This document shows, in pieces, positions 24,908-55,567 of a DNA stretch of 64,000 nucleotides; the stretch's first letter is position 1, and every line of letters begins with the position of its first letter. Below the pieces are notes generated by a model. The model saw only the letters and a list, made by a program, of their open reading frames with translations. It made no database searches and was not told the origin of the DNA. The stretch lies in IMG/VR virus record IMGVR_UViG_3300017917_002466, positions 62,001 to 126,000 of that record. The stretch is one strand, 5' to 3'. Made by a program: the position numbers and the translations under genes.

Positions 24908-24936
24908 TTGACAAACTCGTGAAAATATGTTATATT
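24908..24936 (+). promoter_or_regulatory. sigma70-type promoter of the tRNA array
   Basis: TTGACA-N17-TATATT; a similar promoter lies at 24758-24786. Confidence 0.75.
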
Positions 24937-25394: not shown

Positions 25395-25468
25395 GCCCCC
25401 AAAGCATTAAGGTGATGCACTTGGCTCTTAACCAAGAGAAGAAGGTTCAATACCTTTTGGGGGTACCA
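25395..25468 (+). tRNA. tRNA-Lys(CTT)
   Basis: cttgg-ctCTTaa-ccaag; CCA. Confidence 0.9.
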
Positions 25469-25476
25469 AATTTTTT

Positions 25477-25562
25477 GGCGCGGATGGTAAGTGGTTGAAA
25501 TCAAACGGCTGTAACCCGTTCGCCTCACGGCTATGTAGGTTAAAATCCTACCCGCGTCACCA
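25477..25562 (+). tRNA. tRNA-Tyr(GTA)
   Basis: aacgg-ctGTAac-ccgtt; long variable arm; CCA. Confidence 0.9.
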
Positions 25563-25570
25563 AATTATAT

Positions 25571-25644
25571 AGGCTATTGGTGTAATAGAAACACATTTCT
25601 CTCCAAAAGAAAAGACAAGGGAGCATAACCTTTATAGCCTGCCA
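25571..25644 (+). tRNA. tRNA-Trp(CCA)
   Basis: tttct-ctCCAaa-agaaa; CCA. Confidence 0.85.
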
Positions 25645-25651
25645 ATTTTTT

Positions 25652-25726
25652 GCTTCCAAGGTGTTAAGGTTGCATTTCCGTCTTTTAAGCGGTAGGGTCT
25701 TGGTTCAAGTCCAAGTGGAAGCACCA
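25652..25726 (+). tRNA. tRNA-Lys(TTT)
   Basis: ctTTTaa loop; CCA. Confidence 0.88.
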
Positions 25727-25733
25727 AGTTTGT

Positions 25734-25810
25734 GGAACTGTAGCATAATTGGCTAGTGCACCACATTGTCAATGTGGGTTATGCGGGTTCAAATCCCGTC
25801 GGTTCCGCCA
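25734..25810 (+). tRNA. tRNA-Asp(GTC)
   Basis: ccaca-ttGTCaa-tgtgg; CCA. Confidence 0.9.
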
Positions 25811-25818
25811 TAAGTTAC

Positions 25819-25902
25819 ACCCTCGTCGCCTAGTGGTAATGGCACCAGACTTTTAATCTGACGAGCGCAAGCTCTTCACAGGTTCAAATCCTGTCGGGGG
25901 TA
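25819..25902 (+). tRNA. tRNA-Lys(TTT) with long variable arm
   Basis: caga-ctTTTaa-tctg; gagc-gcaa-gctc extra arm; no encoded CCA. Confidence 0.75.
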
Positions 25903-25914
25903 CTAAAAAGTTAT

Positions 25915-26001
25915 TCCAGAGTATGCAAACTGACAGGGCGGCTTGACTGTTAATCAAGTGTGGGAAACCATCTGTAGGTTTAAATCCTACCTCTGGAGCC
26001 A
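25915..26001 (+). tRNA. tRNA-Asn(GTT) with long variable arm
   Basis: cttga-ctGTTaa-tcaag; tgg-gaaa-cca extra arm; G73; CCA. Confidence 0.78.
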
Positions 26002-26036
26002 AATATTAACATTTACGGAATAATAAAAAGATATAA

Positions 26037-26112
26037 GGGTCTGTAGCTACAATGATAGAGCGCGAGCCCGTTAAGCTCGGAGATGTCAGTTTAACTCTGA
26101 CCGGACCCTCCA
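26037..26112 (+). tRNA. tRNA-Asn(GTT)
   Basis: cgagc-ccGTTaa-gctcg; CCA. Confidence 0.8.
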
Positions 26113-26118
26113 AATCAA

Positions 26119-26193
26119 GCAGTGTAGGCAGATCGGCTATGCGTCACTCTTCCAAAGTGAATCTGGTGAGTTCAACTCTCGCACACTGCACCA
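26119..26193 (+). tRNA. tRNA-Gly(TCC)
   Basis: tcact-ctTCCaa-agtga; CCA. Confidence 0.88.
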
Positions 26194-26200
26194 AAATTTC

Positions 26201-26274
26201 GGGGGTTTCTTCTAGTGGAAAGAAAACTGTCTCTGAAGCAGATAACGGTGGTTCAATTCCATCAACCCTCGCCA
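26201..26274 (+). tRNA. tRNA-Gln(CTG)
   Basis: ctCTGaa loop; CCA. Confidence 0.85.
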
Positions 26275-26292
26275 AAAAGTTTTTAGAAGAAA

Positions 26293-26454
26293 GCTGGGAA
26301 ACAGAGGTTCAAATCCTCTACTGAAGTTGATTTATAGAAGTATGCTGAATTTACTGGCAGGTAAATATAAGCAGAAAATATAAATCCTTTACAAATCAAA
26401 GCCTGCCAGCCGAGATAAGTAAAGTTCAGTTCATCTAGTGGGAGAATACCTGGC
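26293..26454 (+). ncRNA. Circularly permuted tRNA-like RNA with long internal hairpin
   Basis: T arm first, D arm last; ACTGAA/TTCAGT and GCTGGG/CCTGGC helices close a cloverleaf. Confidence 0.5.
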
Positions 26455-26461
26455 GTATTAT

Positions 26462-26536
26462 GGTGGTATTGGTGTAGTAGAAGCATCTGATCCTGTGAAG
26501 ATCAAGGGTTCGGAGCATATCCGAAATATCACCCCA
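26462..26536 (+). tRNA. tRNA-His(GTG)
   Basis: tgatc-ctGTGaa-gatca; G-1, C73; CCA. Confidence 0.88.
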
Positions 26537-26544
26537 AAATTTAT

Positions 26545-26633
26545 TAGGAAGTAGGCCCGTAATTGGTAGCGGTCTTGTTCTGGAAACAAGTGGCAATATG
26601 CTCCTGGGAGTTCGAGTCTCCCCTTCCTAACCA
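26545..26633 (+). tRNA. Class II tRNA, Ser(GGA) or Pro(TGG), anticodon register ambiguous
   Basis: cttgt-tctggaa-acaag; long variable arm; CCA. Confidence 0.65.
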
Positions 26634-26641
26634 AGAATTAT

Positions 26642-26716
26642 GCCGCCGTAGCCAAGTAGAAGGTGATGCCTCTGCAAAAGGTAATCTTTGGGGCGCAACT
26701 CCCCACGGTGGCTCCA
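26642..26716 (+). tRNA. tRNA-Cys(GCA)
   Basis: ctGCAaa loop; U73; CCA. Confidence 0.88.
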
Positions 26717-26793
26717 AATTATTTTCACCAATCTGTGATTTTTTATCATCAAAAGATATAAATACCTCTGATGGGTAAACCAAAAGAGGATTT

Positions 26794-27423
26794 ATGGACT
26801 TAGAAAATAAAAGATACCAATATCTAAAAGACTGGAGAAAAAGAACTAAGCAAAGAATGGTTGATGCTTTTGATGGAAAATGTGGAATTTGTGGATATAA
26901 TAAATGTAAAGAAGCATTAGAATTTCATCATATTGATCCAACAAAAAAAGATTTTACTATTTCAAAAAACAAATTTAACAATTGGGAAAAATTAGTTAAA
27001 GAATTAAAAAAATGTATCTGTATTTGTTCAAATTGTCATAAAGAAATTCATAATGAAATAATTAAAATTCCAATTGATGTTAAAAAATTTAATGAAAATT
27101 ATAATGAATATAGAGTAGAAAAAGAAATTAATTATATTGAATGTCCAGTTTGTAAAAAATTAATGGAAGATACACGTAATTATTGTTCGATGGATTGTTT
27201 TAATAAGATTAGAGAAAAAGTAGATTGGAAAATATTTGATTTAAATAAAATGATTTTAACATCATCTATTTTAGAAATTTCTAAAATAGTTGGAGTTTCA
27301 AATACATCTATTCAAAAAAGACTAAAAAAATTAAATCTTCCTTTTAAAAGAAAAGATATTTTAAAATATAAAATGGATGCTGGCGTGGCTGGTAGTGACG
27401 GTTTGTCTGATAAACAAATGTAG
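26794..27423 (+). CDS. HNH endonuclease inside the tRNA array
   Basis: CGICGY..LEFHHIDP..CSNCHKEIH; late promoter and SD hairpin upstream. Confidence 0.87.
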   Translation: MDLENKRYQYLKDWRKRTKQRMVDAFDGKCGICGYNKCKEALEFHHIDPTKKDFTISKNKFNNWEKLVKELKKCICICSNCHKEIHNEIIKIPIDVKKFNENYNEYRVEKEINYIECPVCKKLMEDTRNYCSMDCFNKIREKVDWKIFDLNKMILTSSILEISKIVGVSNTSIQKRLKKLNLPFKRKDILKYKMDAGVAGSDGLSDKQM

Positions 27424-27451
27424 CGAAGTTCGATTCTTCGGGCATCCACCA
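27375..27451 (+). tRNA. tRNA-Ile(GAT)
   Basis: tttgt-ctGATaa-acaaa; CCA; overlaps the HNH 3' end. Confidence 0.82.
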
Positions 27452-27457
27452 AATTGT

Positions 27458-27540
27458 ACCTTGAGCGTAAAGTCGTACATGGCAGAACTCCGGACTCTGC
27501 TGTTATGTAAAACGTGGTGAAAATCCCATCCAAGGTGCCA
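27458..27540 (+). tRNA. Atypical tRNA-Arg(CCG)
   Basis: ctCCGga loop; non-canonical D and T arms; CCA. Confidence 0.55.
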
Positions 27541-27546
27541 AATTAT

Positions 27547-27622
27547 GCCGCTTGAGCAAGTGTGGTCATTGCATCAGTTTGAAGAACTGACTAACACGGT
27601 TCGATTCCGTGGGGCGGCACCA
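27547..27622 (+). tRNA. tRNA-Phe(GAA)
   Basis: tcagt-ttGAAga-actga; CCA. Confidence 0.9.
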
Positions 27623-27729
27623 AGTTTTTATAAATACAAGTAGAAGTTTGGTCCTCAAAAGAAAGATTCAATTTAACCAAAAAGTTACTGAACAAGGAGA
27701 AATCTATTGAAAATACTTAAACCAGGAAC

Positions 27730-27948
27730 ATGAATACAAAAAACCGTTTTGATTTTTTGTTATGTTATTTGGGTAGACACAACTGGAAGAACGAAAGACC
27801 TAAACCTTTATTAACAATGTTCGGTTTAATTATTACATTTGAGAAATATAGATATTGTCAAAGGTGCTTAAAAAGACAAATCTGGGAAGACATTTACGGT
27901 GATTTAAATAAGATTGGAGAATGGATAGACTGTAAAAAGAATTCATAG
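27730..27948 (+). CDS. Hypothetical small protein
   Basis: ORF between tRNAs; C..GRHNW..CQRC. Confidence 0.4.
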   Translation: MNTKNRFDFLLCYLGRHNWKNERPKPLLTMFGLIITFEKYRYCQRCLKRQIWEDIYGDLNKIGEWIDCKKNS

Positions 27949-28020
27949 TGGTGTAGAATAATGTAGTTCCCCTCGTTTTCAGCGAGAAATGTGCGGGTTC
28001 AAGTCTCGTCGCCACTACCA
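27947..28020 (+). tRNA. tRNA-Glu(TTC)
   Basis: ctcg-ttTTCag-cgag; CCA. Confidence 0.8.
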
Positions 28021-28027
28021 AATTTAT

Positions 28028-28103
28028 GCTCCCATCGTCTAACGGTTTAGGATGCCAGATTTTCAATCTGAGAACGTGAGTTCAACTCTCACTGGGAGTA
28101 CCA
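28028..28103 (+). tRNA. tRNA-Glu(TTC)
   Basis: caga-ttTTCaa-tctg; CCA. Confidence 0.88.
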
Positions 28104-28109
28104 AGTTAT

Positions 28110-28185
28110 GCCGTTCAAGCAATTGAAGTCAATGCGCTTGCCTGAAGAGCAAGATAATCCGGGGCAGTACCGGGGGGCGGCACCA
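28110..28185 (+). tRNA. tRNA-Phe(GAA)
   Basis: cttgc-ctGAAga-gcaag; CCA. Confidence 0.82.
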
Positions 28186-28221
28186 CGGAAAATGCGGGGT
28201 CGAATCCCGTCACCACTACCA
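28186..28221 (+). pseudogene. Orphan 3' half of tRNA-Glu
   Basis: gaaaatgcggggtcgaatcccgtcaccactacca resembles the 3' half of 27947-28020. Confidence 0.7.
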
Positions 28222-28255
28222 AATTACCGAAGGACATAATTTTATAAATATAAGT

Positions 28256-28582
28256 ATGAAATGCTTATTTTTACATAAAGGATGTCCATATAATTATAAT
28301 CAACATAACTTACAACATTCTTATGGTTGGATAAGTCCAGATGGTATTTTTTATGGTTGTGAAAAATATGAGCATATAAAAAGATCAGAGTTCTTACTAC
28401 CTAATTATCCAAATTCGGAAGCTAAATTAGAATATGACAGATGGATAAAAGTTTCAGAAGAATTAAATGATAAAATAATATGTTTTGGAAAAGTTACACA
28501 AGCACAAATAGATATATTATCAGATTGGTGTATTGTGCATTGCTTTAAATTTCCACACGAATATATCGATAATTTTCTATAA
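28256..28582 (+). CDS. Hypothetical protein
   Basis: GWISPDG..C..YEH motif; late promoter upstream. Confidence 0.6.
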   Translation: MKCLFLHKGCPYNYNQHNLQHSYGWISPDGIFYGCEKYEHIKRSEFLLPNYPNSEAKLEYDRWIKVSEELNDKIICFGKVTQAQIDILSDWCIVHCFKFPHEYIDNFL

Positions 28583-28635
28583 CATAGTTCATAAATACCA
28601 TTGATGCTATTTACGACATCAACGGGGGAAATAGA

Positions 28636-28815
28636 TTGGAAATTATTTTAGTTTTATCCATAGCAGTATTTTTAGCAAGTGGACTAAGTTTTTATTTTGG
28701 AATGTTGTTTGAAGGATTGAGATGGTCTGAAAAAACAAATATTAACGGAAAAATAATATCTTTTATGGGTAATCAATATAAAGTAACAAAAATACTTTTA
28801 AAACCAAAAGAATAG
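28636..28815 (+). CDS. Small membrane protein (TTG start, not in ORF track)
   Basis: MEIILVLSIAVFLASGLSFYFGMLF; G-rich SD. Confidence 0.45.
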   Translation: MEIILVLSIAVFLASGLSFYFGMLFEGLRWSEKTNINGKIISFMGNQYKVTKILLKPKE

Positions 28816-28836
28816 GACGATTAAAAATTTTAAAAT

Positions 28837-28912
28837 CGGGATGTGGCGCAGCGAGTAGCGCGCTCGCTTTGGGAGCGAGTGGTCGCCGGGGCGGAGCCGG
28901 CCATCCCGACCA
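28837..28912 (+). tRNA. tRNA-Pro(TGG)
   Basis: ctcgc-ttTGGga-gcgag; CCA. Confidence 0.88.
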
Positions 28913-28928
28913 AGTTTCAAAAATTCTA

Positions 28929-28985
28929 AAGGATGAGTTCAGCAATCAAAAATTCTTATTAAAAAAGAAAACAAGTTCATCCTGT
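28929..28985 (+). ncRNA. Y-RNA-like element 1
   Basis: AAGGATGAGTTCAGCAA..TTCATCCTGT; inner ttctt-attaaaa-aagaa hairpin. Confidence 0.75.
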
Positions 28986-28993
28986 GAATCAAT

Positions 28994-29080
28994 GGAAGGT
29001 TAGAGCGTAATTAGTAGCGTGTCGGTCTTGAAAACCGAACCCGAAAGGGCCTGGGGATGCGATTTCCTCACCTTCCGCCA
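28994..29080 (+). tRNA. tRNA-Ser(TGA)
   Basis: tcggt-ctTGAaa-accga; long arm; G73; CCA. Confidence 0.88.
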
Positions 29081-29086
29081 ATTTTT

Positions 29087-29161
29087 GGGGGATTAGTTTA
29101 TTCAGGAAAACATAAGCCTTGCAAGCTTAAAAGCCCGGAGCGTAGCCGGGATTCTCCACCA
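29087..29161 (+). tRNA. tRNA-Ala(TGC)
   Basis: ctTGCaa loop; G3:U70; CCA. Confidence 0.9.
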
Positions 29162-29167
29162 AATTAT

Positions 29168-29242
29168 ACCAAGTGGCAGGTCAGCATCTGAGGACGTCTC
29201 ATAAGCGTTCTGAATAGGGGTCAGCACCCTAACTTGGTACCA
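29168..29242 (+). tRNA. tRNA-Met(CAT)
   Basis: gacgt-ctCATaa-gcgtt; CCA. Confidence 0.8.
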
Positions 29243-29256
29243 AAGGAGTAACTTAT

Positions 29257-29564
29257 ATGCCAAAAGCCACAAAGGAAAATCAACCTTAACAGTTGTAGGT
29301 GAAACTGAAGATGGTAAGAAAGTTGTCAGAGGATTGTTTTTAATAAGCACTTCAATAACTGGATTACCTTTAGAAGATTGCTTAGAAATTTTGAAAAAGA
29401 ATAATCTTGTGGTAGATTGGATAGACTTTATAGAAGATGCTATCAAGTATAAATGGAAGATGGAAAGAACATTGATAAAGATAGAAACATCAGTTGAAGA
29501 AGTTTACGGAAAAGAATATTGTCAAGAAGTAATGAAAAGAATTAAAGGATGGGTTCAGCAATAA
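29257..29564 (+). pseudogene. Hypothetical protein with frameshift near its start
   Basis: SD GGAG plus ATG at 29257 is out of frame with the open KSHKGKSTLTVVGETEDGKKVVRGLFLIS.. frame. Confidence 0.5.
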
Positions 29565-29664
29565 AAATCCATTACAAGGCGCGTGTCGGTGGTTCGATTC
29601 CATCCGCTCCCACATTACTGGAGTGTAGCTCAGTTGGTAGAGCAGCAAAAAAAAGTCCATCCTG
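29545..29664 (+). ncRNA. Y-RNA-like element 2 enclosing a circularly permuted tRNA-Val (YrlA-like)
   Basis: AAGGATGGGTTCAGCAA..TCCATCCTG around T arm, loop-closed acceptor stem and D arm. Confidence 0.85.
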
Positions 29665-29678
29665 AATTTATGTAAAAT

Positions 29679-29757
29679 GCCAAGTTCGCATAGCGGTCGA
29701 TTGCGCCTCTCTTGTAAGGAGGAATTACCGGGGGTTCGACTCCCTCACTTGGCTCCA
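29679..29757 (+). tRNA. tRNA-Thr(TGT)
   Basis: ctTGTaa loop; CCA. Confidence 0.88.
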
Positions 29758-29770
29758 GACTATAAAACAG

Positions 29771-29831
29771 AAGACTGGTTCCAGCAAACCAAAACTATTT
29801 GCTTGTTAAGCAAACAAAGTAATCCAGTCTG
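29771..29831 (+). ncRNA. Y-RNA-like element 3
   Basis: AAGACTGGTTCCAGCAA..CCAGTCTG; inner tttgc-ttGTTaa-gcaaa anticodon-like hairpin. Confidence 0.75.
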
Positions 29832-29860
29832 AGTTTAAATTTTTTAAAAAATAATAAATC

Positions 29861-29950
29861 GGTAAAATGGGCGAGTGGTTTATGCCAGCACACTGCTAAC
29901 GTGCCGGGCCCTAAAAAGCTCCACAGGTTCGAATCCTGTTTTTACCGCCA
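29861..29950 (+). tRNA. tRNA-Ser(GCT)
   Basis: ctGCTaa loop; long arm; G73; CCA. Confidence 0.9.
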
Positions 29951-29957
29951 AATAAAC

Positions 29958-30034
29958 GCACCCATAGTTCAGATAGCAAGAATACGTTCTTGGTAAGAAT
30001 GAGGCGGTTGGTGCAAGTCCAACTGGGTGCTCCA
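29958..30034 (+). tRNA. tRNA-Thr(GGT)
   Basis: cgttc-ttGGTaa-gaatg; CCA. Confidence 0.88.
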
Positions 30035-30037
30035 TAT

Positions 30038-30111
30038 GCCACTATAGCTTAATGTAAAGCCTTCGCCTCGTAAGCGAAAAGATTTCATTTCAAATATGAA
30101 TAGTGGCTCCA
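30038..30111 (+). tRNA. tRNA-Thr(CGT)
   Basis: ttcgc-ctCGTaa-gcgaa; CCA. Confidence 0.85.
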
Positions 30112-30120
30112 AAGATAAAT

Positions 30121-30199
30121 ACCTGTGTATCTCACCAGTCTTCTAAACTGTGTAAGAGTAATTGGATTAATGTGGGTTCAAGTCCCATCACAGGTTCCA
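30121..30199 (+). tRNA. D-armless tRNA-like RNA, anticodon TCT
   Basis: Perfect acceptor ACCTGTG/CACAGGT, T arm and CCA; no D arm; ~20-nt variable region. Confidence 0.65.
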
Positions 30200-30227
30200 C
30201 CTGACAATCAAGGAGAAATATCATATA

Positions 30228-30431
30228 ATGAAACGTAGAGATTTTCTAGGATTTACAATAGCATCCTTACTCTTAGTAGGATGTGCAGCTAGCCCAAATA
30301 TTATATATTATGTTGAGTCAGAGAAAGAAGTTGAATCGATGAGAAAACGATTAGAAGAAAGGGGTGAAAAAGTAGTTGATGTGAAGTTTGATAAAATAAG
30401 TAATTTGTATATCATTAAAATTAAAAAATAA
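30228..30431 (+). CDS. Small putative Tat-signal lipoprotein
   Basis: MKRRDFL..LLLVGC. Confidence 0.6.
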   Translation: MKRRDFLGFTIASLLLVGCAASPNIIYYVESEKEVESMRKRLEERGEKVVDVKFDKISNLYIIKIKK

Positions 30432-30445
30432 TTTAAGAAAGAAAA

Positions 30446-30922
30446 ATGAATAAGCAAAATACTAATAAACTTATAAAAAAACATAGATATATGTTTGATG
30501 AATTATTCAGAAGCCGATTAATCAAAAAAGAACAAGATAGATTGGCAGATGAATTTTCAGAAGCTAAAATTGAAGACGATGAAATAAAAATTGCTCAAAT
30601 AATGGAAGAACAAAGACAAGTTGGTTCTTATTATCCAATAGCCTTTGGTTTTGAATGTGGTGATGGATGGTATAAACTTCTTGATGATTTAATGACAGAA
30701 ATTGAAAAAATAGATACAGAAAAGAAGGTTGAAGTTCATCAAGTAAAAGAAAAATCTGGTGGATTAAGATTTTATGCCGAGAATACTTCAAATGAAATAG
30801 AAGATATTATCAGCCGATATATGGATAGATCATATCAAACTTGTGAAATTTGTGGGCAACCAGGAAAAACAAACAAAAAAGGATGGTTGAGAACGGCTTG
30901 TAAGGAACACGAAAGAAATTAA
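30446..30922 (+). CDS. Conserved phage hypothetical protein
   Basis: FECGDGW..QVKEKSGGLRFY..CEICG. Confidence 0.75.
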   Translation: MNKQNTNKLIKKHRYMFDELFRSRLIKKEQDRLADEFSEAKIEDDEIKIAQIMEEQRQVGSYYPIAFGFECGDGWYKLLDDLMTEIEKIDTEKKVEVHQVKEKSGGLRFYAENTSNEIEDIISRYMDRSYQTCEICGQPGKTNKKGWLRTACKEHERN

Positions 30923-30930
30923 GAGATTAA

Positions 30931-31016
30931 GCGGTCGTGGAGGAATGGCAGACTCACAAGGCTAAGAACCTTGTGGAAGAAATTCCGTGAGGGTTCAACT
31001 CCCTCCGACCGCACCA
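30931..31016 (+). tRNA. tRNA-Leu(AAG)
   Basis: acaagg-ctAAGaa-ccttgt; long arm; A73; CCA. Confidence 0.82.
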
Positions 31017-31105
31017 AATAAAAATATCAAAGAAGCTTTGGAAAAATTAAAACTTACATATAATGGTGGAAATTTCGTAAGAGCAAAGAAAATATTAAAT
31101 GATAT

Positions 31106-31182
31106 GCTGGGGTAGCCCAATTGGTAGAGGCGATTTGTTTAGAGCGAATATGTTGTGGGTTCGAATCCCATCTCCAGTACCA
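31106..31182 (+). tRNA. tRNA-Leu(TAG), short variable loop
   Basis: atttg-ttTAGag-cgaat; CCA. Confidence 0.82.
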
Positions 31183-31190
31183 AGATTTAA

Positions 31191-31265
31191 GCAGTGTTGG
31201 CCTAATAGTTGGGCGCTAGCCTTCCAAGCTGGTTCAAGTGGGAGCGTTACCCACACACTGCTCCA
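31191..31265 (+). tRNA. tRNA-Gly(TCC)
   Basis: ctagc-ctTCCaa-gctgg; CCA. Confidence 0.82.
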
Positions 31266-31272
31266 AGTTTAT

Positions 31273-31366
31273 GCTAAGATGGTGGAATGGAAAGACACGG
31301 TAGCTTCAGAAGCTACTGAGAACCTTGCTAGTTCTCGTGTAGGTTCGAATCCTGCTCTTAGCACCA
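31273..31366 (+). tRNA. tRNA-Leu(CAG)
   Basis: gtagc-ttCAGaa-gctac; long arm; CCA. Confidence 0.9.
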
Positions 31367-31374
31367 GAAATTAA

Positions 31375-31449
31375 GCTCTTGTAGTGTAACGTATAGCACG
31401 AGTCGCGTCGAACGATTTAGTGAGGGTTAGATTCCTTCCAAGAGCGCCA
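31375..31449 (+). tRNA. tRNA-Arg(TCG), G at position 33
   Basis: agtcg-cgTCGaa-cgatt; CCA. Confidence 0.65.
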
Positions 31450-31453
31450 ATAC

Positions 31454-31525
31454 ACTTCCTTAGTGAAAAGGAAATAATATTACCCTACGAAGGTAAAGTT
31501 GATGGTTCAAATCCATCAGGAAGTA
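31454..31525 (+). tRNA. tRNA-Arg(ACG)
   Basis: ttacc-ctACGaa-ggtaa; no encoded CCA. Confidence 0.82.
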
Positions 31526-31529
31526 TATT

Positions 31530-31667
31530 TTTATAATGTAACTCTCTATGACAATTAGCACAAACAAGAATACATTTATCTAGTTCTTTTTGAAAAATAT
31601 CCCAAATTCTATATTTGGCCTTTGAAAGAGAGAATTCTTTTTTATTCTGGTCTAAAAGGTGTACCAA
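31530..31667 (-). pseudogene. HNH endonuclease relic
   Basis: HLLDQNKKEFSLS..ELDKCILVCANCHRELH, paralogous to 26794-27423. Confidence 0.75.
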
Positions 31668-31684
31668 AAAATTATGGAGAAATT

Positions 31685-32074
31685 ATGAATAAATTTAAAA
31701 GTGTAGTTATTAGATCAGCAGAAAATAATATTCACAATAAACAACTAAGAAAAAGAGTTGAATATAGTCTTTCCGCTGACTTTGAATATATACCCAGAGA
31801 AATTGTTGTTTTGATAATTGTCAATGGTAAATATTATTTGAAAAGTAAAAAGGGTGATTATGTAGATGATAAAACTAAAGTTAATGTAGATGCTTTGATT
31901 TATAATAATATTTACTATGCTTATATTTTGGAAAAGCAAAAAAATAAATCAATTACTTTTAAAAAAAAAGAAGACGTTAAAGACAAGAATAAGTATAAAA
32001 ATAAAAATGCCATCGCATTGATTCCTAAAAAATGGATTGAAGATGGAACTATTGTTCTTGATAAAAAAGTATGA
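31685..32074 (+). CDS. Hypothetical protein
   Basis: GGAG SD before ATG 31685. Confidence 0.55.
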   Translation: MNKFKSVVIRSAENNIHNKQLRKRVEYSLSADFEYIPREIVVLIIVNGKYYLKSKKGDYVDDKTKVNVDALIYNNIYYAYILEKQKNKSITFKKKEDVKDKNKYKNKNAIALIPKKWIEDGTIVLDKKV

Positions 32075-32075
32075 T

Positions 32076-32149
32076 GCTCCTATCAGCTAACGGTAGGCTT
32101 CCAAACCTTCAATCTGAGAATTAAGTTTCAACTTCCCATAGGAGTACCA
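32076..32149 (+). pseudogene. Degenerate tRNA-Glu(TTC)
   Basis: Similar to 28028-28103, but the T and anticodon stems are disrupted. Confidence 0.65.
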
Positions 32150-32156
32150 AGTTTAT

Positions 32157-32233
32157 GCGCCTGTAATTCAGTAGAATAGAATAATGGTTTTCTAAACCAT
32201 AAGTCACAGGTTTGAATCCTGTCAGGCGTACCA
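32157..32233 (+). tRNA. tRNA-Arg(TCT)
   Basis: atggt-ttTCTaa-accat; CCA. Confidence 0.88.
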
Positions 32234-32241
32234 AATAACAT

Positions 32242-32316
32242 ACAGCTATAGTACAATGGATAGTGCACTAGTTTCCTAAACCTGAAATTCTGGTTCGATT
32301 CCAGATAGCTGTACCA
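32242..32316 (+). tRNA. tRNA-Arg(CCT)
   Basis: ttCCTaa loop; CCA. Confidence 0.8.
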
Positions 32317-32337
32317 AATTTTATCTCTTTTTATCAT

Positions 32338-32422
32338 AGGAGCCAAGGCAACTGGTTGTGGCCGCCAGTCTTATAAGCTGGGAAACTAAACGAGGTGGGT
32401 TCAATTCCCACGGCTCCTACCA
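32338..32422 (+). tRNA. tRNA-Ile(TAT)
   Basis: ccagt-ctTATaa-gctgg; enlarged variable region; CCA. Confidence 0.8.
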
Positions 32423-32459
32423 AAAATATAAATATTTTCAAATATACAATGGAGGGTGA

Positions 32460-32669
32460 ATGGCACACATCTGCGAATTTTTTCCTTGTCATAAACTAAT
32501 TGATGGGTTTAATTGTAAAAATTGTTATTGCCCACTTTATGACCATACCGATTGTCAACATTTTGGTGGGGAACCTAAATTTCTTTACTCAAAAGGGGAG
32601 AAAATAAAAGACTGTTCAGATTGTATTCTCCCTCATAAGCCAGACTTTAAAATACAAACAAGATATTGA
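32460..32669 (+). CDS. Cysteine-rich small domain protein
   Basis: [24 protein letters not shown]. Confidence 0.7.
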
Positions 32670-32694
32670 CATTTTACAAGGATGATATTATATT
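32666..32694 (+). promoter_or_regulatory. sigma70-type promoter
   Basis: TTGACA-N17-TATATT. Confidence 0.7.
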
Positions 32695-32702
32695 AATAAT
32701 AT

Positions 32703-32778
32703 GCCTGTTTCTTCTAGTGGTATAGGAAGTTTGCCTTACAAGCAGAAAACGATGGTTCGATTCCATCAATAGGCACCA
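32703..32778 (+). tRNA. tRNA-Val(TAC)
   Basis: ctTACaa loop; CCA. Confidence 0.88.
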
Positions 32779-32785
32779 AATATTT

Positions 32786-32856
32786 ACTCGTTTAGTTCAA
32801 CGGAAGAATATCTGTTTGACGTACAGAAGACAATAGTTCAACTCTATTAACGAGTA
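32786..32856 (+). tRNA. tRNA-Val(GAC)
   Basis: tctgt-ttGACgt-acaga; no encoded CCA. Confidence 0.82.
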
Positions 32857-32917
32857 TAAAAACAAATTATGATTCGTTAAATTATGGTAATGGACAAAAA
32901 ACTAAACATAAAAATAA

Positions 32918-32991
32918 GCGGAAGTAGTTCAACGGTAGAATGCGACTTTGCCAAGGTTGAGACAGGAGTTCAACTCTCCTTTTCCGCACCA
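32918..32991 (+). tRNA. tRNA-Gly(GCC)
   Basis: ttGCCaa loop; CCA. Confidence 0.88.
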
Positions 32992-32997
32992 AATTAC

Positions 32998-33074
32998 TGG
33001 GGTGTTGCCTAATGGATCAAGGCGCGGGTCTTTGAAGCCTGTCCGTGAAGGTTCAATTCCTTCCACCCCAACCA
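32998..33074 (+). tRNA. tRNA-Gln(TTG)
   Basis: ctTTGaa loop; U1:A72; CCA. Confidence 0.88.
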
Positions 33075-33130
33075 GATAAACATAAATATTAATATAGGAT
33101 TTGATTTTGAACATTTTAAAGGAGGTTTGT

Positions 33131-33433
33131 ATGAAGATGGTTCCGTTGTACAATAAGTTGATTGTTGAACTTCTTCCCGAAGAGTCCGAAAAGAGATCAG
33201 CAACAGGTTTAATTCTTCCGGGAAAAATTTCTCCGTATTACAGGGGAAAGGTGACTGGTGTTGGTAAAGGTCATTATCAAAATGCTCAAAGAATTCCAAT
33301 GGATGTTAAGGAAGGAGATATTGTAGTCTTCTTAAAGAACTGTGGAATGGGAATTGAGTTTGATAACGGAAATAACCCAACAAAGCTTATTTTGGATGAT
33401 ACAAATATTTACGCAGTAGAGGAAAACGACTAA
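33131..33433 (+). CDS. groES: GroES co-chaperonin
   Basis: PLYNKLIV..SATGLILP..GKVTGVGKG..DVKEGDIV. Confidence 0.9.
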   Translation: MKMVPLYNKLIVELLPEESEKRSATGLILPGKISPYYRGKVTGVGKGHYQNAQRIPMDVKEGDIVVFLKNCGMGIEFDNGNNPTKLILDDTNIYAVEEND

Positions 33434-33489
33434 ATTGTCACAGCCAAACTGGGAATTTTAGATCAAAAATAAAAAAATTGTATATAAAT

Positions 33490-33573
33490 GCTCTGGTGGT
33501 GGAATTGGTATACACATCACGCTTAAGACGTGATGCCCGTAAGGGATTGGGGGTTCAACTCCCCCCCAGAGTA
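33490..33573 (+). tRNA. tRNA-Leu(TAA)
   Basis: tcacg-ctTAAga-cgtga; long arm. Confidence 0.9.
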
Positions 33574-33583
33574 CTAAATTAAT

Positions 33584-33663
33584 GCTCCGGTAGCCCAACT
33601 TTGGTAGAGGCCGTAAGCTCAAACCTTACGTTAGTGTGGGTCCGAATCCCATCCGGAGTACCA
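33584..33663 (+). tRNA. tRNA-Leu(CAA), short variable loop
   Basis: gtaag-ctCAAac-cttac; CCA. Confidence 0.82.
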
Positions 33664-41678: not shown

Positions 41679-41815
41679 AAGAGTAGGTTCTGCAATCAAA
41701 ATAATACTTAAAGGAAGTCCCAATGTCATAGCCGGGGACACAAAATAATCGGTTGTGGTGGACTTTTATTAATTGAGAAAGTTAGTTCTAAAAGAAATAA
41801 TCTGACTACTCTGGG
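41679..41815 (+). ncRNA. Y-RNA-like element 4
   Basis: AAGAGTAGGTTCTGCAA..CTACTCTG. Confidence 0.7.
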
Positions 41816-41835
41816 AATTACTAAATTATGGCTTA

Positions 41836-41969
41836 AAGGATGGGTTCGGCAAACCAAAATAGCCCGAAAGGGCATCAAGGTAGCCGTCAATAAAAGGCGG
41901 CGGAGAGGAAGTTAAACTTGCAAAGGCTTCCCTCTCTAAAATAAAAAAGAAACCTTTCTAACATCCTGT
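41836..41969 (+). ncRNA. Y-RNA-like element 5
   Basis: AAGGATGGGTTCGGCAA..CATCCTGT; GAAA-tetraloop and other inner hairpins. Confidence 0.75.
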
Positions 41970-41995
41970 AGCTTATTCTTTGACAAACGCATCTA

Positions 41996-42134
41996 AAGGA
42001 TGAATTCGGCAACCAAATTTGATGCGAAAGCATCACTATAACAGGTTATAAGCTGCGACACCGAAAGGTGACCAGATACTAACCAAGGTTTTTTGGAGAC
42101 TTTTCCCTAAATAAAAATCTTTCAAGCATCCTGT
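41996..42134 (+). ncRNA. Y-RNA-like element 6
   Basis: AAGGATGAATTCGGCAA..CATCCTGT; two GAAA tetraloop hairpins. Confidence 0.75.
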
Positions 42135-42229: not shown

Positions 42230-42321
42230 AAGGATAGATTCAGCAAACTAAAAGGAAAATAGCTCGCAAGAGCTTATTTGGTTCAAATCCAAAAACGTCG
42301 CAAGACGAAAAACTATCCTGT
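42230..42321 (+). ncRNA. Y-RNA-like element 7
   Basis: AAGGATAGATTCAGCAA..CTATCCTGT; two GCAA tetraloops flanking a tttgg-TTCAAAT-ccaaa T-arm mimic. Confidence 0.78.
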
Positions 42322-42341: not shown

Positions 42342-42401
42342 AAGGGTGAGTTCAGCAACTCAAAAACAAACAACTCATAATTGTTAAAAAGTTCACCCTG
42401 T
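42342..42401 (+). ncRNA. Y-RNA-like element 8
   Basis: AAGGGTGAGTTCAGCAA..TTCACCCTGT; aacaa-ctCATaa-ttgtt anticodon mimic. Confidence 0.78.
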
Positions 42402-42434: not shown

Positions 42435-42486
42435 AAGGTTGGATTCCGCAATTAAAATCCATAATTAGGAAAAAAGACCAACCTGT
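42435..42486 (+). ncRNA. Y-RNA-like element 9
   Basis: AAGGTTGGATTCCGCAA..CCAACCTGT. Confidence 0.75.
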
Positions 42487-53916: not shown

Positions 53917-54533
53917 ATGCAAACTTCCTCAGTAGTAAATTTGATATTCTTTATTCGGGTTTGGACTTTACCCATTACGATTGTCTTTTGAATTTTACCA
54001 ATTAAATTATTTGGAGCAAACAACTGAATACCTGTACTAGTTACACAATTATTGCGCCAATTTGCAGACTTCAAAATGCCACAATTGACAGAATAGAAAA
54101 ATCCTTTTATCAACCCACGATTTCTTGAACGATTTGAAATCACTCTATCATTATCAAGCTTATAACCAACTAAAATATAATTGCCACATTTCTTATAAGG
54201 ATTTTTAATCGTTGTTCCAGTTCCACAAAATACAAGACTCTTTTGCTTATTTTCTTTAGTGGTCTTCATTTCAAAACGGGTTCCGTCAATAAGAAAGTCA
54301 GCATCATGCTCTTGAATAATCTGACAAGGAATCTTTCTACTCTTGCAGACTTTAAAGAAAACCATTTCAAAGAAGTTTCCAACTCCAGAATGATTCTTTT
54401 GAAAAGCCTCTCCAACATCATACCCCATACTACTTGACCAGTACAAGGGAATGTGGGATTCTTTTTGAAATGTATTAACCAGTTCTTCTGCAAAACTACG
54501 ACTTGTAATTTGATTGAAATATCTTTTTCTCAC
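53913..54533 (-). CDS. Hypothetical PD-(D/E)XK-like nuclease
   Basis: DADFLIDGTRFEMKTT. Confidence 0.5.
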   Translation of the reverse strand: MRKRYFNQITSRSFAEELVNTFQKESHIPLYWSSSMGYDVGEAFQKNHSGVGNFFEMVFFKVCKSRKIPCQIIQEHDADFLIDGTRFEMKTTKENKQKSLVFCGTGTTIKNPYKKCGNYILVGYKLDNDRVISNRSRNRGLIKGFFYSVNCGILKSANWRNNCVTSTGIQLFAPNNLIGKIQKTIVMGKVQTRIKNIKFTTEEVCI

Positions 54534-55567
54534 TTGAACTCGGTGCCTCCTTTACGAGTAAGATACTGGTCAAAAACATATTTGAGTATAACTCTTCCAA
54601 CTTTAGCATCAAATCTTTCAAGTACTGGTTTGATAACAACACCTTCCATAATGTTGTCTGCACCGGCAATCTGAGATTTACTATTGCTAAATTTCATAAC
54701 TTCAGACATAGAAAAAGGACCACGATAAAGAACTGGTACAACATCAACATTGAAGCGACCACAAGTTCCAATCATTGCAGGATAGTCCATATACTTTGCA
54801 CCAACACGAATATCAAAGCAACGATAACCAAAATCTCCCTGTTTGAATCCATAATGCAAGTCCTGAATCCAACCAAAGATTTCACCAAACATAATGACCG
54901 GCAAGTTCCCATTTTCATTGGAAACAGTTTTGACAAGCTCTTTCATATTATCACTAAAAACACTCCACCAACGGCTCTGAGCATTTTCTTTCTTCCTCAT
55001 AGTATGAGAACCAACCATAAACTCGCCACCAATATAAGCACATCTATGATTCGCTCCGTGGAGCTTCTCAGTCATAACAACATCCTCACCTTCAAGAATG
55101 ATGTTAGGAAAATTCCTCATATTCTGAATGTCGGTGTACTTCTCCAATAGAACGTGAGGTCTTTCGGCATCTTCATTGTTGAAGATAGGCGGTGGTTCCC
55201 ACTTAGTAACTCCAAATCCTTCTGTCAGGTCAGTACCTTCACCAAAGTTCCTCTTGTCAAAAGGAGGCGGGTAGATATAGTCTTCTCCCTTATCCTTATT
55301 CCAAAGTAGCCCATAAGATGGCTCACCACGAAGCTTAGCAGCACAAACCCTTCCATTATGAAGATATTTGGTTACTCCAATAGCTTCAGAAAGCCTTTCG
55401 GGAAGAACCGAATCAAGAGGAAAGTAAACAACAAGTTCGCCGGCTTTGAATTCGCCTTTACGAACTACAGTCTGCCATCCTTTGACAATAGCAAGTTCAA
55501 GAGCATCAGCATTTGGATGCACTTTGATTTCATCAATCTTTACAACTTCAACCTTTAGTTCAGACAT
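54530..55567 (-). CDS. ATP-dependent RNA ligase (DRB0094/Rnl5 family)
   Basis: N-terminal HPNAD.LE OB-like domain; EKLHGAN, FGEIFG, EGVVIKP, LKYV. Confidence 0.88.
   Translation of the reverse strand: MSELKVEVVKIDEIKVHPNADALELAIVKGWQTVVRKGEFKAGELVVYFPLDSVLPERLSEAIGVTKYLHNGRVCAAKLRGEPSYGLLWNKDKGEDYIYPPPFDKRNFGEGTDLTEGFGVTKWEPPPIFNNEDAERPHVLLEKYTDIQNMRNFPNIILEGEDVVMTEKLHGANHRCAYIGGEFMVGSHTMRKKENAQSRWWSVFSDNMKELVKTVSNENGNLPVIMFGEIFGWIQDLHYGFKQGDFGYRCFDIRVGAKYMDYPAMIGTCGRFNVDVVPVLYRGPFSMSEVMKFSNSKSQIAGADNIMEGVVIKPVLERFDAKVGRVILKYVFDQYLTRKGGTEFK

What the first reader, a model, noticed from the sequence alone, without database searches (positions are those of the whole stretch)
29545..29664. YrlA-like RNA: the Y-like stem encloses a circularly permuted tRNA-Val
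Seen, inside AGGATGGG/TCCATCCT: TTACAA-GGCGC (anticodon remnant UAC), T arm GGTGG-TTCGATT-CCATC, acceptor 3' strand CGCTCCC, a 7-nt loop ACATTAC, acceptor 5' strand TGGAGTG, and D arm GCTC-AGTTGGTA-GAGC. Established: bacterial YrlA Y RNAs have this topology, with a Ro60-binding stem plus a permuted tRNA-like domain with a loop-closed acceptor stem. This is the strongest internal evidence that the repeated motif is a Ro-binding module. The near-intact Val sequence suggests recent capture of a real tRNA gene.
Basis: partly seen in the sequence, partly recalled or inferred. Interest (0 to 1): 0.85.

Follow-up and report, generated by a model that had tools for sequence, protein, structure and literature searches.

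The report
Phage tRNA-mimic Y RNA, new handle
Inside this jumbo phage's tRNA gene cluster lies a small RNA gene folded like a tRNA turned inside out, carrying the same "handle" as eight sibling RNAs, and it most likely docks onto the phage's Ro60-like protein; the same RNA family occurs unannotated in hundreds of cultured phages.

Summary

The core interpretation holds. This is a Y-RNA-like gene whose terminal stem encloses a circularly permuted tRNA-like domain: T arm, loop-closed acceptor stem and D arm.

- Syntenic orthologues in two related 250-kb phages, and about 12 further viral contigs, keep all helices through compensatory changes. The tRNA 15-48 Levitt pair covaries as well.
- The handle is a 7-bp stem followed by YC-N-GCAA. 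It recurs nine times in the window, all on the + strand: three in the tRNA array and six directly upstream of gene 42514-43986.
- That gene's product is Pfam DUF2828+DUF7788, not TROVE. Its predicted structure nevertheless matches Ro60 over its full length.
- The same handle lies beside DUF2828 genes in Felix O1-like, Listeria, Campylobacter, Stenotrophomonas and cluster-L mycobacterium phages.

Two claims are not supported. There is no sign of recent capture of a tRNA-Val, because the UUACAA is absent from the orthologues. It is also not a member of Rfam YrlA: it scores 33.8 bits against a cut-off of 69 and has no GNCGAA motif.

Verdict: a real, conserved, unannotated sister family of YrlA-type Y RNAs. 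Expression and protein binding remain untested.

The parts
29546..29664 (+). The finding: a tRNA-mimic Y-like RNA gene, comprising handle and permuted tRNA-like domain.
   Evidence: Model R2 scores it 110 bits, but it was in the training set. Model R1, the handle model built without it, scores 36.6 bits, E 4e-6. Rfam YrlA gives a partial match of 33.8 bits. Orthologues are L007:5984-6106 and L009:3193-3327.
29546..29553 (+). Handle 5' strand AGGAUGGG. It pairs with 29656-29663.
   Evidence: Pairs covary across copies and phages (GGAUGG, GGGUGA, GGUUGG, GAGUAG, GACCGU ...).
29554..29561 (+). Conserved unpaired motif UUCAGCAA (family consensus YC-N-GCAA). Proposed protein-contact site.
   Evidence: C, G, C and A are invariant in 14 handle copies from 6 phages. 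The motif is present in all nine window copies.
29562..29587 (+). Variable 5' linker. It contains UUACAA (29572-77), GGCGC (29578-82, the position of tRNA 39-43) and the variable loop GUGUC with C48 at 29587.
   Evidence: UUACAA is not conserved in orthologues. The anticodon-like helix has 2 of 5 pairs here against usually 4 of 5 in relatives. C48 covaries with G15.
29588..29604 (+). T arm GGUGG-UUCGAUU-CCAUC.
   Evidence: 3 of 5 pairs show double changes, and 98.7% of cells are paired.
29605..29625 (+). Acceptor stem closed by a 7-nt loop (CGCUCCC-ACAUUAC-UGGAGUG). There is no CCA.
   Evidence: All 8 aligned pairs show compensatory changes. L007 has CCUUUCC/GGGAAGG and L009 has UCCCCCG/CGGGGGA.
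29626..29643 (+). U8 and A9 followed by the D arm GCUC-AGUUGGUA-GAGC, with A14, G15 and G18G19.
   Evidence: Matches the D arm of the YrlA consensus. The 15-48 pair covaries as CG 10, UA 4.
29644..29663 (+). A-rich 3' linker (29644-29655) and handle 3' strand UCCAUCCU (29656-29663), followed by a conserved G at 29664.
28930..28984 (+). Short sibling Y-like RNA (handle plus small loop) in the tRNA array.
   Evidence: R1 60.4 bits, E 1e-11.
29772..29831 (+). Short sibling Y-like RNA in the tRNA array (stem AGACUGG/CCAGUCU, motif UCCAGCAA).
   Evidence: R1 51.5 bits.
41680..41813 (+). Sibling copy 0 upstream of the Ro-like gene (AGAGUAG/CUACUCU, UUCUGCAA).
   Evidence: R1 26.1 bits, E 1e-3.
41837..41968 (+). 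Sibling copy 1, with a long inner domain of GNRA-capped hairpins. Its stem has only 5 pairs.
   Evidence: R1 18.1 bits, E 0.076; sequence.
41997..42133 (+). Sibling copy 2, with a long inner domain. Its stem has only 5 pairs.
   Evidence: R1 17 bits, E 0.13.
42231..42320 (+). Sibling copy 3. Its inner domain includes a T-arm-like hairpin UUGGUUCAAAUCCAA.
   Evidence: R1 44.6 bits.
42343..42400 (+). Sibling copy 4 (GGGUGA/UCACCC).
   Evidence: R1 54.6 bits.
42436..42485 (+). Sibling copy 5 (GGUUGG/CCAACC), 28 nt upstream of the start codon of the Ro-like gene.
   Evidence: R1 49.7 bits.
42514..43986 (+). Ro60-like ring plus vWA protein (Pfam DUF2828 + DUF7788). Proposed binding partner.
   Evidence: Pfam. 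AF2 pLDDT 90.9. The top 7 Foldseek PDB hits are all Ro60. The MIDAS residues D278, S280, S282 and T366 are invariant.
25395..33663 (+). tRNA array of at least 35 genes, all on the + strand, that hosts the element. A strong promoter-like site lies at 24908-24936.
48222..49541 (-). RtcB RNA ligase. Context: RNA repair.
   Evidence: Pfam RtcB, 7e-59. Also conserved near the gene in relatives.
54530..55567 (-). RNA ligase (RNA_ligase plus PHA02142 OB domain). Context: RNA repair.

Best explanation
The element is a gene for a structured non-coding RNA of the Y-RNA type. Its 5' and 3' ends pair into a 7-8 bp stem, followed by a conserved single-stranded YC-N-GCAA and an A-rich opposite strand. I call this module the 'handle'.

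The handle encloses a tRNA-like domain in permuted order: variable loop, T arm, loop-closed acceptor stem and D arm. That domain can form the tRNA elbow, because G18G19, the T loop and the 15-48 pair are all present.

Proposed mechanism, all of it inferred:
1. The RNA is transcribed with the tRNA array and cut out of the precursor.
2. The handle docks on the phage's Ro60-like DUF2828-vWA protein, as Y RNA stems dock on Ro60.
3. The tRNA mimic then brings a tRNA-recognising factor to the ring, or occupies it. Candidates are a processing or repair enzyme, or a host nuclease that attacks tRNA.
4. The eight sibling RNAs carry the same handle with other inner domains. The protein would therefore be loaded with a set of adaptors.
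5. The likely biological role is RNA quality control, RNA repair or counter-defence during infection.

Shown here: the fold, the covariation, the strand, the paralogy, the genomic association with DUF2828 genes and the Ro60 fold of the protein. Inferred: expression, processing, binding and biological role.
For: - Structure: in 15 elements from different viral contigs, 92% of cells are paired against 35-49% with slid partners. 18 of 25 pairs show double changes, and 0 of 500 shuffles reach any measure. The 15-48 pair covaries as CG 10, UA 4.
- Synteny: orthologues sit in the tRNA arrays of two related 250-kb phages, with compensatory stems.
- Handle: nine copies in the window, all on the + strand. 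Six are packed into the 943-nt gap directly upstream of the Ro-like gene.
- Independent association: loci retrieved by the RNA pattern alone (L011, L018, L034/L038, L041) carry a DUF2828 homologue directly adjacent on the same strand.
- Handle hits lie immediately beside DUF2828 genes in E. coli phage SUSP1, Stenotrophomonas DLP_6, Listeria LP-048, Campylobacter NCTC12673 and mycobacteriophage Crossroads.
- Control: seven tandem-tRNA loci (58 kb) give 0 handle hits, against 17 in the true loci.
- Protein: Ro60 fold over the full length with an intact MIDAS.
- Context: RtcB and an RNA ligase lie nearby.
- Literature: YrlA RNAs have this topology next to Ro60 genes (PMC4201824). The Felix O1-like homologue Bas63 gp130 is Ro60-like and counters the Ppl defence, and its authors guessed that nearby 'tRNA genes' might be Y RNAs (bioRxiv 10.1101/2024.10.10.617714).
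Against: - There is no expression, processing or binding data. The protein link is guilt by association.
- This copy lies 12.9 kb from the gene, not beside it.
- The handle motif differs from the Ro60-binding GGUCCGA / GNCGAA motif, and the protein is not detectably TROVE by sequence, so transferring the Ro60 binding mode is an analogy.
- The MFE z-score is unremarkable (-0.96).
- The anticodon-like helix is degenerate in this copy, at 2 of 5 pairs.
- Conservation of the T loop, D loop and UUCAGCA in alignment A3 was partly imposed by the retrieval pattern.
- The 5' handle overlaps the last six codons of ORF 29334-29564, which has a weak PHROG hit.
Confidence: 0.72

Rival explanations
1. It is debris of the tRNA array. 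The 3' half of one tRNA and the 5' half of the next, or of a tandem duplicate, were left after deletions and have no function of their own. This is the 'dimeric tRNA' false positive that Chen et al. warn about.
For: It lies in a dense tRNA array where neighbouring genes are 3-9 nt apart. Tandem tRNAs do score with my model R2, for example window 32163-32286 at 33.8 bits. Un-permuted joins of the two halves are called tRNA by ARAGORN in 28 of 136 constructs.
Against: - The two 'acceptor strands' are complementary to each other and stay so through compensatory changes in all 8 aligned pairs across phages.
- There is no CCA, although the array's tRNAs encode CCA.
- The enclosing handle is shared with eight non-tRNA siblings.
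- Syntenic orthologues are conserved in relatives with 72-74% protein identity.
Confidence: 0.03
2. It is a circularly permuted tRNA-Val gene that matures into a working tRNA. The outer stem would be cut, the ends ligated (for example by the phage RtcB) and the acceptor loop opened, as with the permuted tRNA genes of Cyanidioschyzon merolae.
For: AUUACAA-GGCGC looks like an anticodon loop plus 3' stem strand of tRNA-Val(UAC). Some joins give an ARAGORN call of tRNA-Val(tac). The phage encodes RtcB.
Against: - The 5' strand of the anticodon stem is missing; only 2 of 5 pairs are possible.
- Orthologues have no anticodon-loop-like sequence at that place.
- There is no CCA.
- The phage already has tRNA-Val(UAC) at 32703-32778.
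- The outer stem plus YC-N-GCAA is shared with RNAs that have no tRNA parts.
Confidence: 0.03
3. The shared stem plus YC-N-GCAA is not a protein handle for the Ro-like protein. It would instead be a processing or punctuation signal (RNase III or RNase E site, or a terminator/antiterminator) for tRNA-array and neighbouring transcripts, or the binding site of some other factor.
For: Copies flank tRNAs and sit between promoter-like sites. No binding data exist. The motif differs from known Ro60-binding motifs.
Against: - The handle tracks the DUF2828 gene, not tRNA arrays. It lies next to the gene in Crossroads, where no tRNA is annotated in the 11-kb stretch fetched.
- In DLP_6 it also lies next to the gene, and the only tRNA in the stretch is about 1 kb upstream.
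- It is absent from control tRNA arrays.
- Six copies are stacked in front of the gene, 8.9 kb from the array.
- The enclosed domains are themselves conserved, structured RNAs.
Confidence: 0.15
4. It is simply a member of the known YrlA family (Rfam RF02553), bound by an ordinary Ro60 orthologue.
For: The Rfam YrlA model aligns to the T arm, acceptor and D arm core. The topology is the same, and the partner has the Ro60 fold.
Against: - It scores 33.8 bits against a gathering score of 69, and only model positions 24-84 of 114 align.
- Crossroads scores 21.6 bits.
- No GNCGAA or CGAA motif is present.
- The partner is Pfam DUF2828/DUF7788 and is not found by sequence searches against Ro60.
Confidence: 0.07

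Closest known systems
YrlA (Y RNA-like A; Rfam RF02553; Chen et al. 2014, PMC4201824)
   Same: - A terminal protein-binding region encloses a tRNA-like domain in the same permuted order: variable region, T arm, loop-closed acceptor stem, D arm.
- The 15-48 Levitt pair covaries.
- It is encoded on the same strand as a Ro60-fold gene, and often several Y RNAs occur per locus.
- It is associated with RtcB.
   Different: - The handle is a covarying 7-bp stem plus YC-N-GCAA instead of GNCGAAN0-1G.
- It scores below the Rfam threshold.
- The partner is DUF2828/DUF7788 rather than TROVE by sequence.
- This copy sits inside a phage tRNA array 12.9 kb from the gene.
- Up to nine handle-bearing RNAs occur per genome.
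- The family is essentially restricted to phages. The same pattern gave 3 hits in 596 Gb of cellular genomes against 31 in viral contigs.
Thermus phage phiLo Ro60 with Yrl1/Yrl2 (PMC12135203)
   Same: A phage-encoded Ro60-fold protein has Y-like RNA genes directly upstream. The architecture is stem, internal loop, stem.
   Different: phiLo has a recognisable Ro60 homologue and a CGAA motif, and no tRNA-like domain is described. In phiLo binding was shown by EMSA and cryo-EM; here nothing has been tested.
Bas63 gp130 (Felix O1-like phage; PhageMaP preprint 10.1101/2024.10.10.617714)
   Same: It appears to be the same protein family. gp130 is Ro60-like by structure and lies just upstream of the tRNA cluster, as does the DUF2828 gene of the Felix O1-like phage SUSP1 studied here. 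Its authors speculated that some downstream 'tRNA genes' are Y RNAs. In SUSP1 I find four handle-bearing RNAs there, one of them tRNA-like.
   Different: The preprint identified no RNA. I did not fetch Bas63 itself. gp130 has a phenotype (it counters the Ppl defence) that has not been tested for this window's phage.
Metazoan and Deinococcus Y RNAs (Yrn1)
   Same: The design is modular. The paired 5' and 3' ends carry the Ro-binding site, and a variable inner module tethers or gates.
   Different: There is no sequence similarity. The conserved motif and its partner differ. Yrn1 has its T and D elements in the other orientation (PMC4201824).
Permuted tRNA genes (Cyanidioschyzon merolae) and two-piece tmRNA genes
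   Same: The 3' half (T arm, acceptor 3' strand) is encoded upstream of the 5' half (acceptor 5' strand, D arm).
   Different: There is no anticodon arm, no CCA and no tag reading frame. ARAGORN calls neither a tRNA nor a tmRNA here. Weak Rfam tmRNA matches (19 bits) only reflect the T arm.

Membership tests
Y RNA (functional class: non-coding RNA partner of a Ro60-fold protein) | Encoded near, and on the same strand as, a Ro60-family gene. | tested here: met
   It is on the same strand, 12.9 kb upstream. Six siblings with the same handle abut the gene. In other phages tRNA-like members abut the gene.
Y RNA (functional class: non-coding RNA partner of a Ro60-fold protein) | The 5' and 3' ends pair into a stem that carries a conserved protein-binding site. 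| tested here: met
   A covarying 7-bp stem with the adjacent invariant C-N-GCA. That this is the binding site is an inference.
Y RNA (functional class: non-coding RNA partner of a Ro60-fold protein) | Physically bound by the Ro60-family protein. | not testable with these tools
   Needs RIP/CLIP or EMSA.
YrlA (Rfam RF02553) | Reaches the Rfam gathering score (69 bits) over the whole model. | tested here: not met
   33.8 bits, model positions 24-84 of 114. No hit at gathering in the whole window.
YrlA (Rfam RF02553) | tRNA-like domain with T arm, loop-closed acceptor stem and D arm in permuted order, with tRNA tertiary-contact nucleotides. | tested here: met
   U8, A14, G15-C48, G18G19, G53-C61 and the UUCGAUU loop are all present.
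YrlA (Rfam RF02553) | GNCGAAN0-1G motif near the 5' end (Chen et al. 2014). | tested here: not met
   No GNCGAA or CGAA in 29540-29670. UUCAGCAA is there instead.
YrlA (Rfam RF02553) | Partner protein annotated as a TROVE-domain Ro60 orthologue. | tested here: not met
   Pfam gives DUF2828 and DUF7788 only. phmmer and profile searches of the PDB miss Ro60. Similarity to Ro60 is seen only at the fold level.
YrlA (Rfam RF02553) | Carries tRNA-type modifications, or is a substrate of tRNA enzymes (TruB, DusA, RNase P). | not testable with these tools
   Needs modification mapping or enzyme assays.
tRNA (genuine or permuted gene) | Complete cloverleaf with anticodon arm, and a 3' end with CCA or a discriminator. 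| tested here: not met
   Not called by ARAGORN or by the Rfam tRNA model. Anticodon-stem equivalent has 2 of 5 pairs. No CCA. The anticodon-like UUACAA is absent from orthologues.
Two-piece (permuted) tmRNA | tRNA-like acceptor/T domain plus a tag reading frame and pseudoknots, as detected by ARAGORN or Rfam. | tested here: not met
   No tmRNA call. beta_tmRNA scores 19.4 bits against a gathering score of 84.
Ro60 / TROVE protein family (for the proposed partner, 42514-43986) | Ring of HEAT-like repeats followed by a vWA domain with a MIDAS. | tested here: met
   AF2 model with pLDDT 90.9 and pTM 0.90. Foldseek hits to Ro60 at TM 0.60 over about 580 columns, E 6e-9. D278-x-S280-x-S282 and T366 are invariant.
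Ro60 / TROVE protein family (for the proposed partner, 42514-43986) | Sequence membership (Pfam TROVE PF05731). | tested here: not met
   No TROVE hit at E <= 0.01. NCBIfam gives nothing.

The most novel reading that the evidence does not exclude
DUF2828-type Ro-like proteins occur in about 700 sequenced phages, including Felix O1-like, Listeria A511-like, Campylobacter and cluster-L mycobacterium phages. They may work with their own, so far undescribed, family of modular Y RNAs. These RNAs share a handle (7-bp stem plus YC-N-GCAA) joined to interchangeable inner domains, one of which is a full tRNA mimic. The resulting RNP would be a phage counter-defence or RNA-repair device, and the RNAs would be required for phenotypes such as the Ppl-counter activity of Bas63 gp130.
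Probability: 0.5. Interest if true: 0.85.

Novelty: new variant of a known kind. Interest (0 to 1): 0.72.

Why it matters
Ro60 and Y RNA particles are known from animals to bacteria, but what the tRNA-like domain of bacterial Y RNAs does is still open.

This finding gives a large, sequence-divergent branch of Ro60-fold proteins in phages a concrete set of candidate RNA partners. It defines a handle that can be mutated and exact gene coordinates that can be deleted.

The same RNAs are present but unannotated in genetically tractable phages. A 226-nt SUSP1 segment holding two of these RNAs is conserved in 248 records of Felix O1-like phages (Escherichia, Salmonella, Shigella and Citrobacter). 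There it is mostly annotated as nothing, as small 'hypothetical proteins' or occasionally as a tRNA.

A homologous protein already has a defence-related phenotype. The question of how a Ro-like RNP and a tRNA mimic help a phage therefore becomes directly testable. The finding also corrects annotation, because these loci are neither tRNAs nor small ORFs.

Tried and rejected
- Thermodynamic significance: the MFE z-score is -0.96, which is not informative.
- Rfam at gathering thresholds gives only tRNAs in the window. Permissive Rfam scans of 41500-42600 and of the SUSP1 array find no family for the handle RNAs.
- Sequence-level link of the protein to Ro60: phmmer, a 38-sequence profile against the PDB, and NCBIfam all found nothing. 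Only the fold comparison worked.
- Extending the handle helix by three more pairs (UU with AR) gave 57-71% pairing and no covariation, so I dropped it.
- tRNA-Val identity and donor: the best similarities to the window's tRNAs are weak and not specific to Val, and the ARAGORN anticodon depends on where the halves are joined.
- AGGATGGG as a word is not enriched: 37 matches against 30 expected. The repeat is a structure, not a word.
- The search for related loci with the single protein returned only the source contig and one fragment. Relatives had to be reached through the protein database and contig look-ups.
- Supplementary tables of Chen et al. 2014 and the 2020 Annual Review were not available. 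I therefore could not check which 22 phages they scored.
- I did not fetch a TROVE-type phage locus to view the full Rfam YrlA consensus. The comparison of handle motifs rests on the motif as described in PMC4201824.

Full report
**What is at the coordinates.** The window is low in G+C (34%) and phage-like. Its source contig is IMGVR_UViG_3300017917_002466, 253,664 bp. It carries an array of at least 35 tRNA genes at 25395-33663, all on the + strand.

- outer stem AGGATGGG (29546-53) with TCCATCCT (29656-63)
- T arm, 29588-29604
- acceptor 3' strand, 7-nt loop and acceptor 5' strand, 29605-29625
- D arm, 29628-29643

The minimum-free-energy fold reproduces exactly this arrangement. Its z-score is only -0.96, so stability alone proves nothing. 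Rfam's YrlA model aligns to the T arm, closed acceptor and D arm core at 33.8 bits. That is far below the gathering score of 69 and covers only model positions 24-84 of 114.

**The handle is a repeated module.** The stem is followed by UUCAGCAA. The same arrangement occurs nine times in the window, all on the + strand: a 7-bp stem whose sequence varies but stays complementary, one nucleotide, YC-N-GCAA, an A-rich 3' side, and the complementary strand followed by G.
- Three copies lie in the tRNA array: 28930-28984, the finding itself, and 29772-29831.
- Six copies fill the 943-nt gap between an HSP20 gene and gene 42514-43986.

I built a covariance model from 14 short copies taken from six phages, leaving out the finding. 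It recovers the finding at 36.6 bits (E 4e-6) and the long copies at E 1e-3 to 0.13. The only minus-strand hit is weak (E 0.52).

The inner domains differ. They include short loops and GNRA-capped hairpins. One copy (42231-42320) has a T-arm-like hairpin. Only the finding has the full tRNA-like domain.

**Comparative evidence.** Two related phages carry syntenic orthologues of the finding in their tRNA arrays. They are on contigs of 253 kb and 264 kb, with Ro-like proteins 74% and 72% identical. The orthologues are L007:5984-6106 and L009:3193-3327.

Their stems show compensatory changes:
- outer stem AGAAUGGG/UCCAUUCU and AGGAUGU/GCAUCCU
- acceptor CCUUUCC/GGGAAGG and UCCCCCG/CGGGGGA

A pattern scan of viral contigs gave 31 loci. 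About 15 of these are non-redundant true elements, and the rest are tandem tRNAs.

On the 15-sequence alignment, RNAalifold predicts the outer stem, T stem, acceptor stem and D stem. The pair counts are as follows:
- 92% of cells are paired, against 35-49% with slid partners.
- 18 of 25 pairs show changes on both sides.
- None of 500 shuffles reaches any measure.
- The tertiary 15-48 Levitt pair covaries as C-G in 10, U-A in 4 and U-G in 1.

One caveat applies. The retrieval pattern fixed UUCAGCA and parts of the T and D loops, so conservation there is by construction. The stems were free to vary.

G-U pairs in the stems fix the strand as +.

A short anticodon-like helix usually has 4 of 5 pairs in relatives (67% paired in register against 24-44% slid). 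In the window copy it is degenerate, at 2 of 5.

**The partner protein.** Gene 42514-43986 matches Pfam DUF2828 and DUF7788, not TROVE. Neither sequence nor profile searches find Ro60. An AlphaFold model (pLDDT 90.9) has Ro60 structures as its seven best PDB matches: E 6e-9 to 4e-7, TM 0.60, full length. Isolated vWA domains follow. The MIDAS residues are invariant.

The family occurs in 694 phage records. Cluster-L mycobacteriophages annotate it 'Ro-like RNA binding protein'.

**Association of RNA and protein.**
- Loci found by the RNA pattern alone (L011, L018, L034/L038, L041) turn out to carry a DUF2828 homologue of 30-37% identity directly adjacent on the same strand.
- In E. coli phage SUSP1 the gene is followed by a tRNA array holding three short handle RNAs and one 119-nt tRNA-like one.
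- In mycobacteriophage Crossroads a tRNA-like member (51 bits) lies just 3' of the gene.
- In Listeria LP-048, Campylobacter NCTC12673 and Stenotrophomonas DLP_6, handle hits lie in the gap just 5' of the gene.
- Seven control loci with tandem tRNAs (58 kb) give no handle hit, against 17 in the true loci.
- The same RNA pattern gives only 3 loci in 596 Gb of cellular genomes. One of them, a Lentisphaeria MAG contig, has two strong hits.
- RtcB and an RNA ligase lie within 12 kb in the window and in its relatives.

**What it most likely does.** By analogy with Ro60 and Y RNA, I propose the following sequence:
1. The RNA is made with the tRNA-array transcript and excised.
2. The handle docks on the Ro-like ring.
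3. The tRNA mimic recruits or occupies a tRNA-recognising factor.
4. The siblings act as alternative adaptors.

Shown here are the fold, the covariation, the strand, the paralogy, the genomic linkage and the protein fold. Expression, processing, binding and biological role are inferred.

A preprint reports that the Ro60-like gp130 of the Felix O1-like phage Bas63 counters the Ppl defence. Its authors guessed that some neighbouring 'tRNA genes' might be Y RNAs, without identifying any. That fits these results and offers a phenotype to test.

**Rivals.**
- tRNA debris or a dimeric-tRNA artefact, the caveat raised in PMC4201824, is excluded by the compensatory changes in the closed acceptor stem and by the shared handle.
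- A functional permuted tRNA-Val is contradicted in four ways. The anticodon-stem strand is missing. There is no CCA. UUACAA is absent from orthologues. An intact tRNA-Val(UAC) already exists at 32703.
- A pure processing signal is unlikely, because the handle follows the DUF2828 gene rather than tRNA arrays.
- Plain membership of Rfam YrlA fails on score, motif and partner family.

**Comparison with the known, and novelty.** The element works like YrlA (Chen et al. 2014). It also resembles the Y-like RNAs of Thermus phage phiLo (PMC12135203). It differs in four ways:
- It has a different conserved handle.
- It has a sequence-divergent partner family.
- It reaches up to nine copies per genome.
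- It lives inside phage tRNA arrays.

I found no description of RNA partners for DUF2828 proteins in the searchable literature and no Rfam family for them. A 226-nt SUSP1 segment holding two of these RNAs is conserved in 248 phage records. There it is largely unannotated or called 'hypothetical protein' or tRNA.

I therefore rate it a new variant of a known kind.

Noticed in passing
window 46207-46280 (-): A suppressor-type tRNA with anticodon CTA, labelled tRNA-Pyl by ARAGORN and scoring 55.8 bits with the Rfam tRNA model. It lies on the opposite strand from the tRNA array and hints at TAG read-through or recoding in part of this phage's genes.
   Followed up: no
window 25571-25641, 26037-26109, 30121-30196 (+): Three further tRNA-model hits from Rfam (49, 47 and 32 bits) that ARAGORN did not call. 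The array is therefore larger than 35 genes, or it contains degenerate tRNAs.
   Followed up: no
window 42231-42320 (+): Sibling Y-like RNA whose inner domain has two GCAA-capped hairpins and a T-arm-like hairpin UUGGUUCAAAUCCAA. This is reminiscent of YrlB, which keeps only a T arm.
   Followed up: partly
window 29334-29564 (+): A 76-codon ORF (PHROG 22967, E 2e-5) whose last six codons (K G W V Q Q stop) overlap the 5' handle strand and UUCAGCAA. The orthologous site in L007 has a tRNA-Met instead of this ORF, so the RNA does not depend on it.
   Followed up: partly
L008 19249-20162: A close relative of L007 keeps the Y-like RNAs in its tRNA array. At the place where L007 has the Ro-like gene it shows a TnpB-like (Cas12f1-like_TNB) gene. 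This may be an insertion or a replacement at the locus.
   Followed up: no
L050 1880-1996 and 2216-2329 (Lentisphaeria MAG contig, 293 kb): Two strong tRNA-like Y RNA hits (102 and 85 bits) in a contig binned as a bacterial genome. It may be a jumbo phage or prophage binned with the MAG.
   Followed up: no
L046 (Listeria phage LP-048, NC_024359) 1-11440: The order is the same as in the window: tRNA array, then handle RNAs, then the DUF2828 gene. RtcB, a 'tRNA amidotransferase' and an RNA ligase follow downstream. The record also annotates a 'tRNA-OTHER' at locus 3298-3372.
   Followed up: partly
window 41612-41645 and 42153-42181 (+): Near-consensus sigma-70-like promoters (TTGACA-17-TATATT) sit in front of groups of Y-like RNA genes. 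The scan tool reported the second site; I saw the first only by eye.
   Followed up: partly
window 41136-41570 (+): An HSP20 (alpha-crystallin) gene lies immediately upstream of the Y RNA cluster. This neighbourhood is conserved in both related phages (L003, L005).
   Followed up: no
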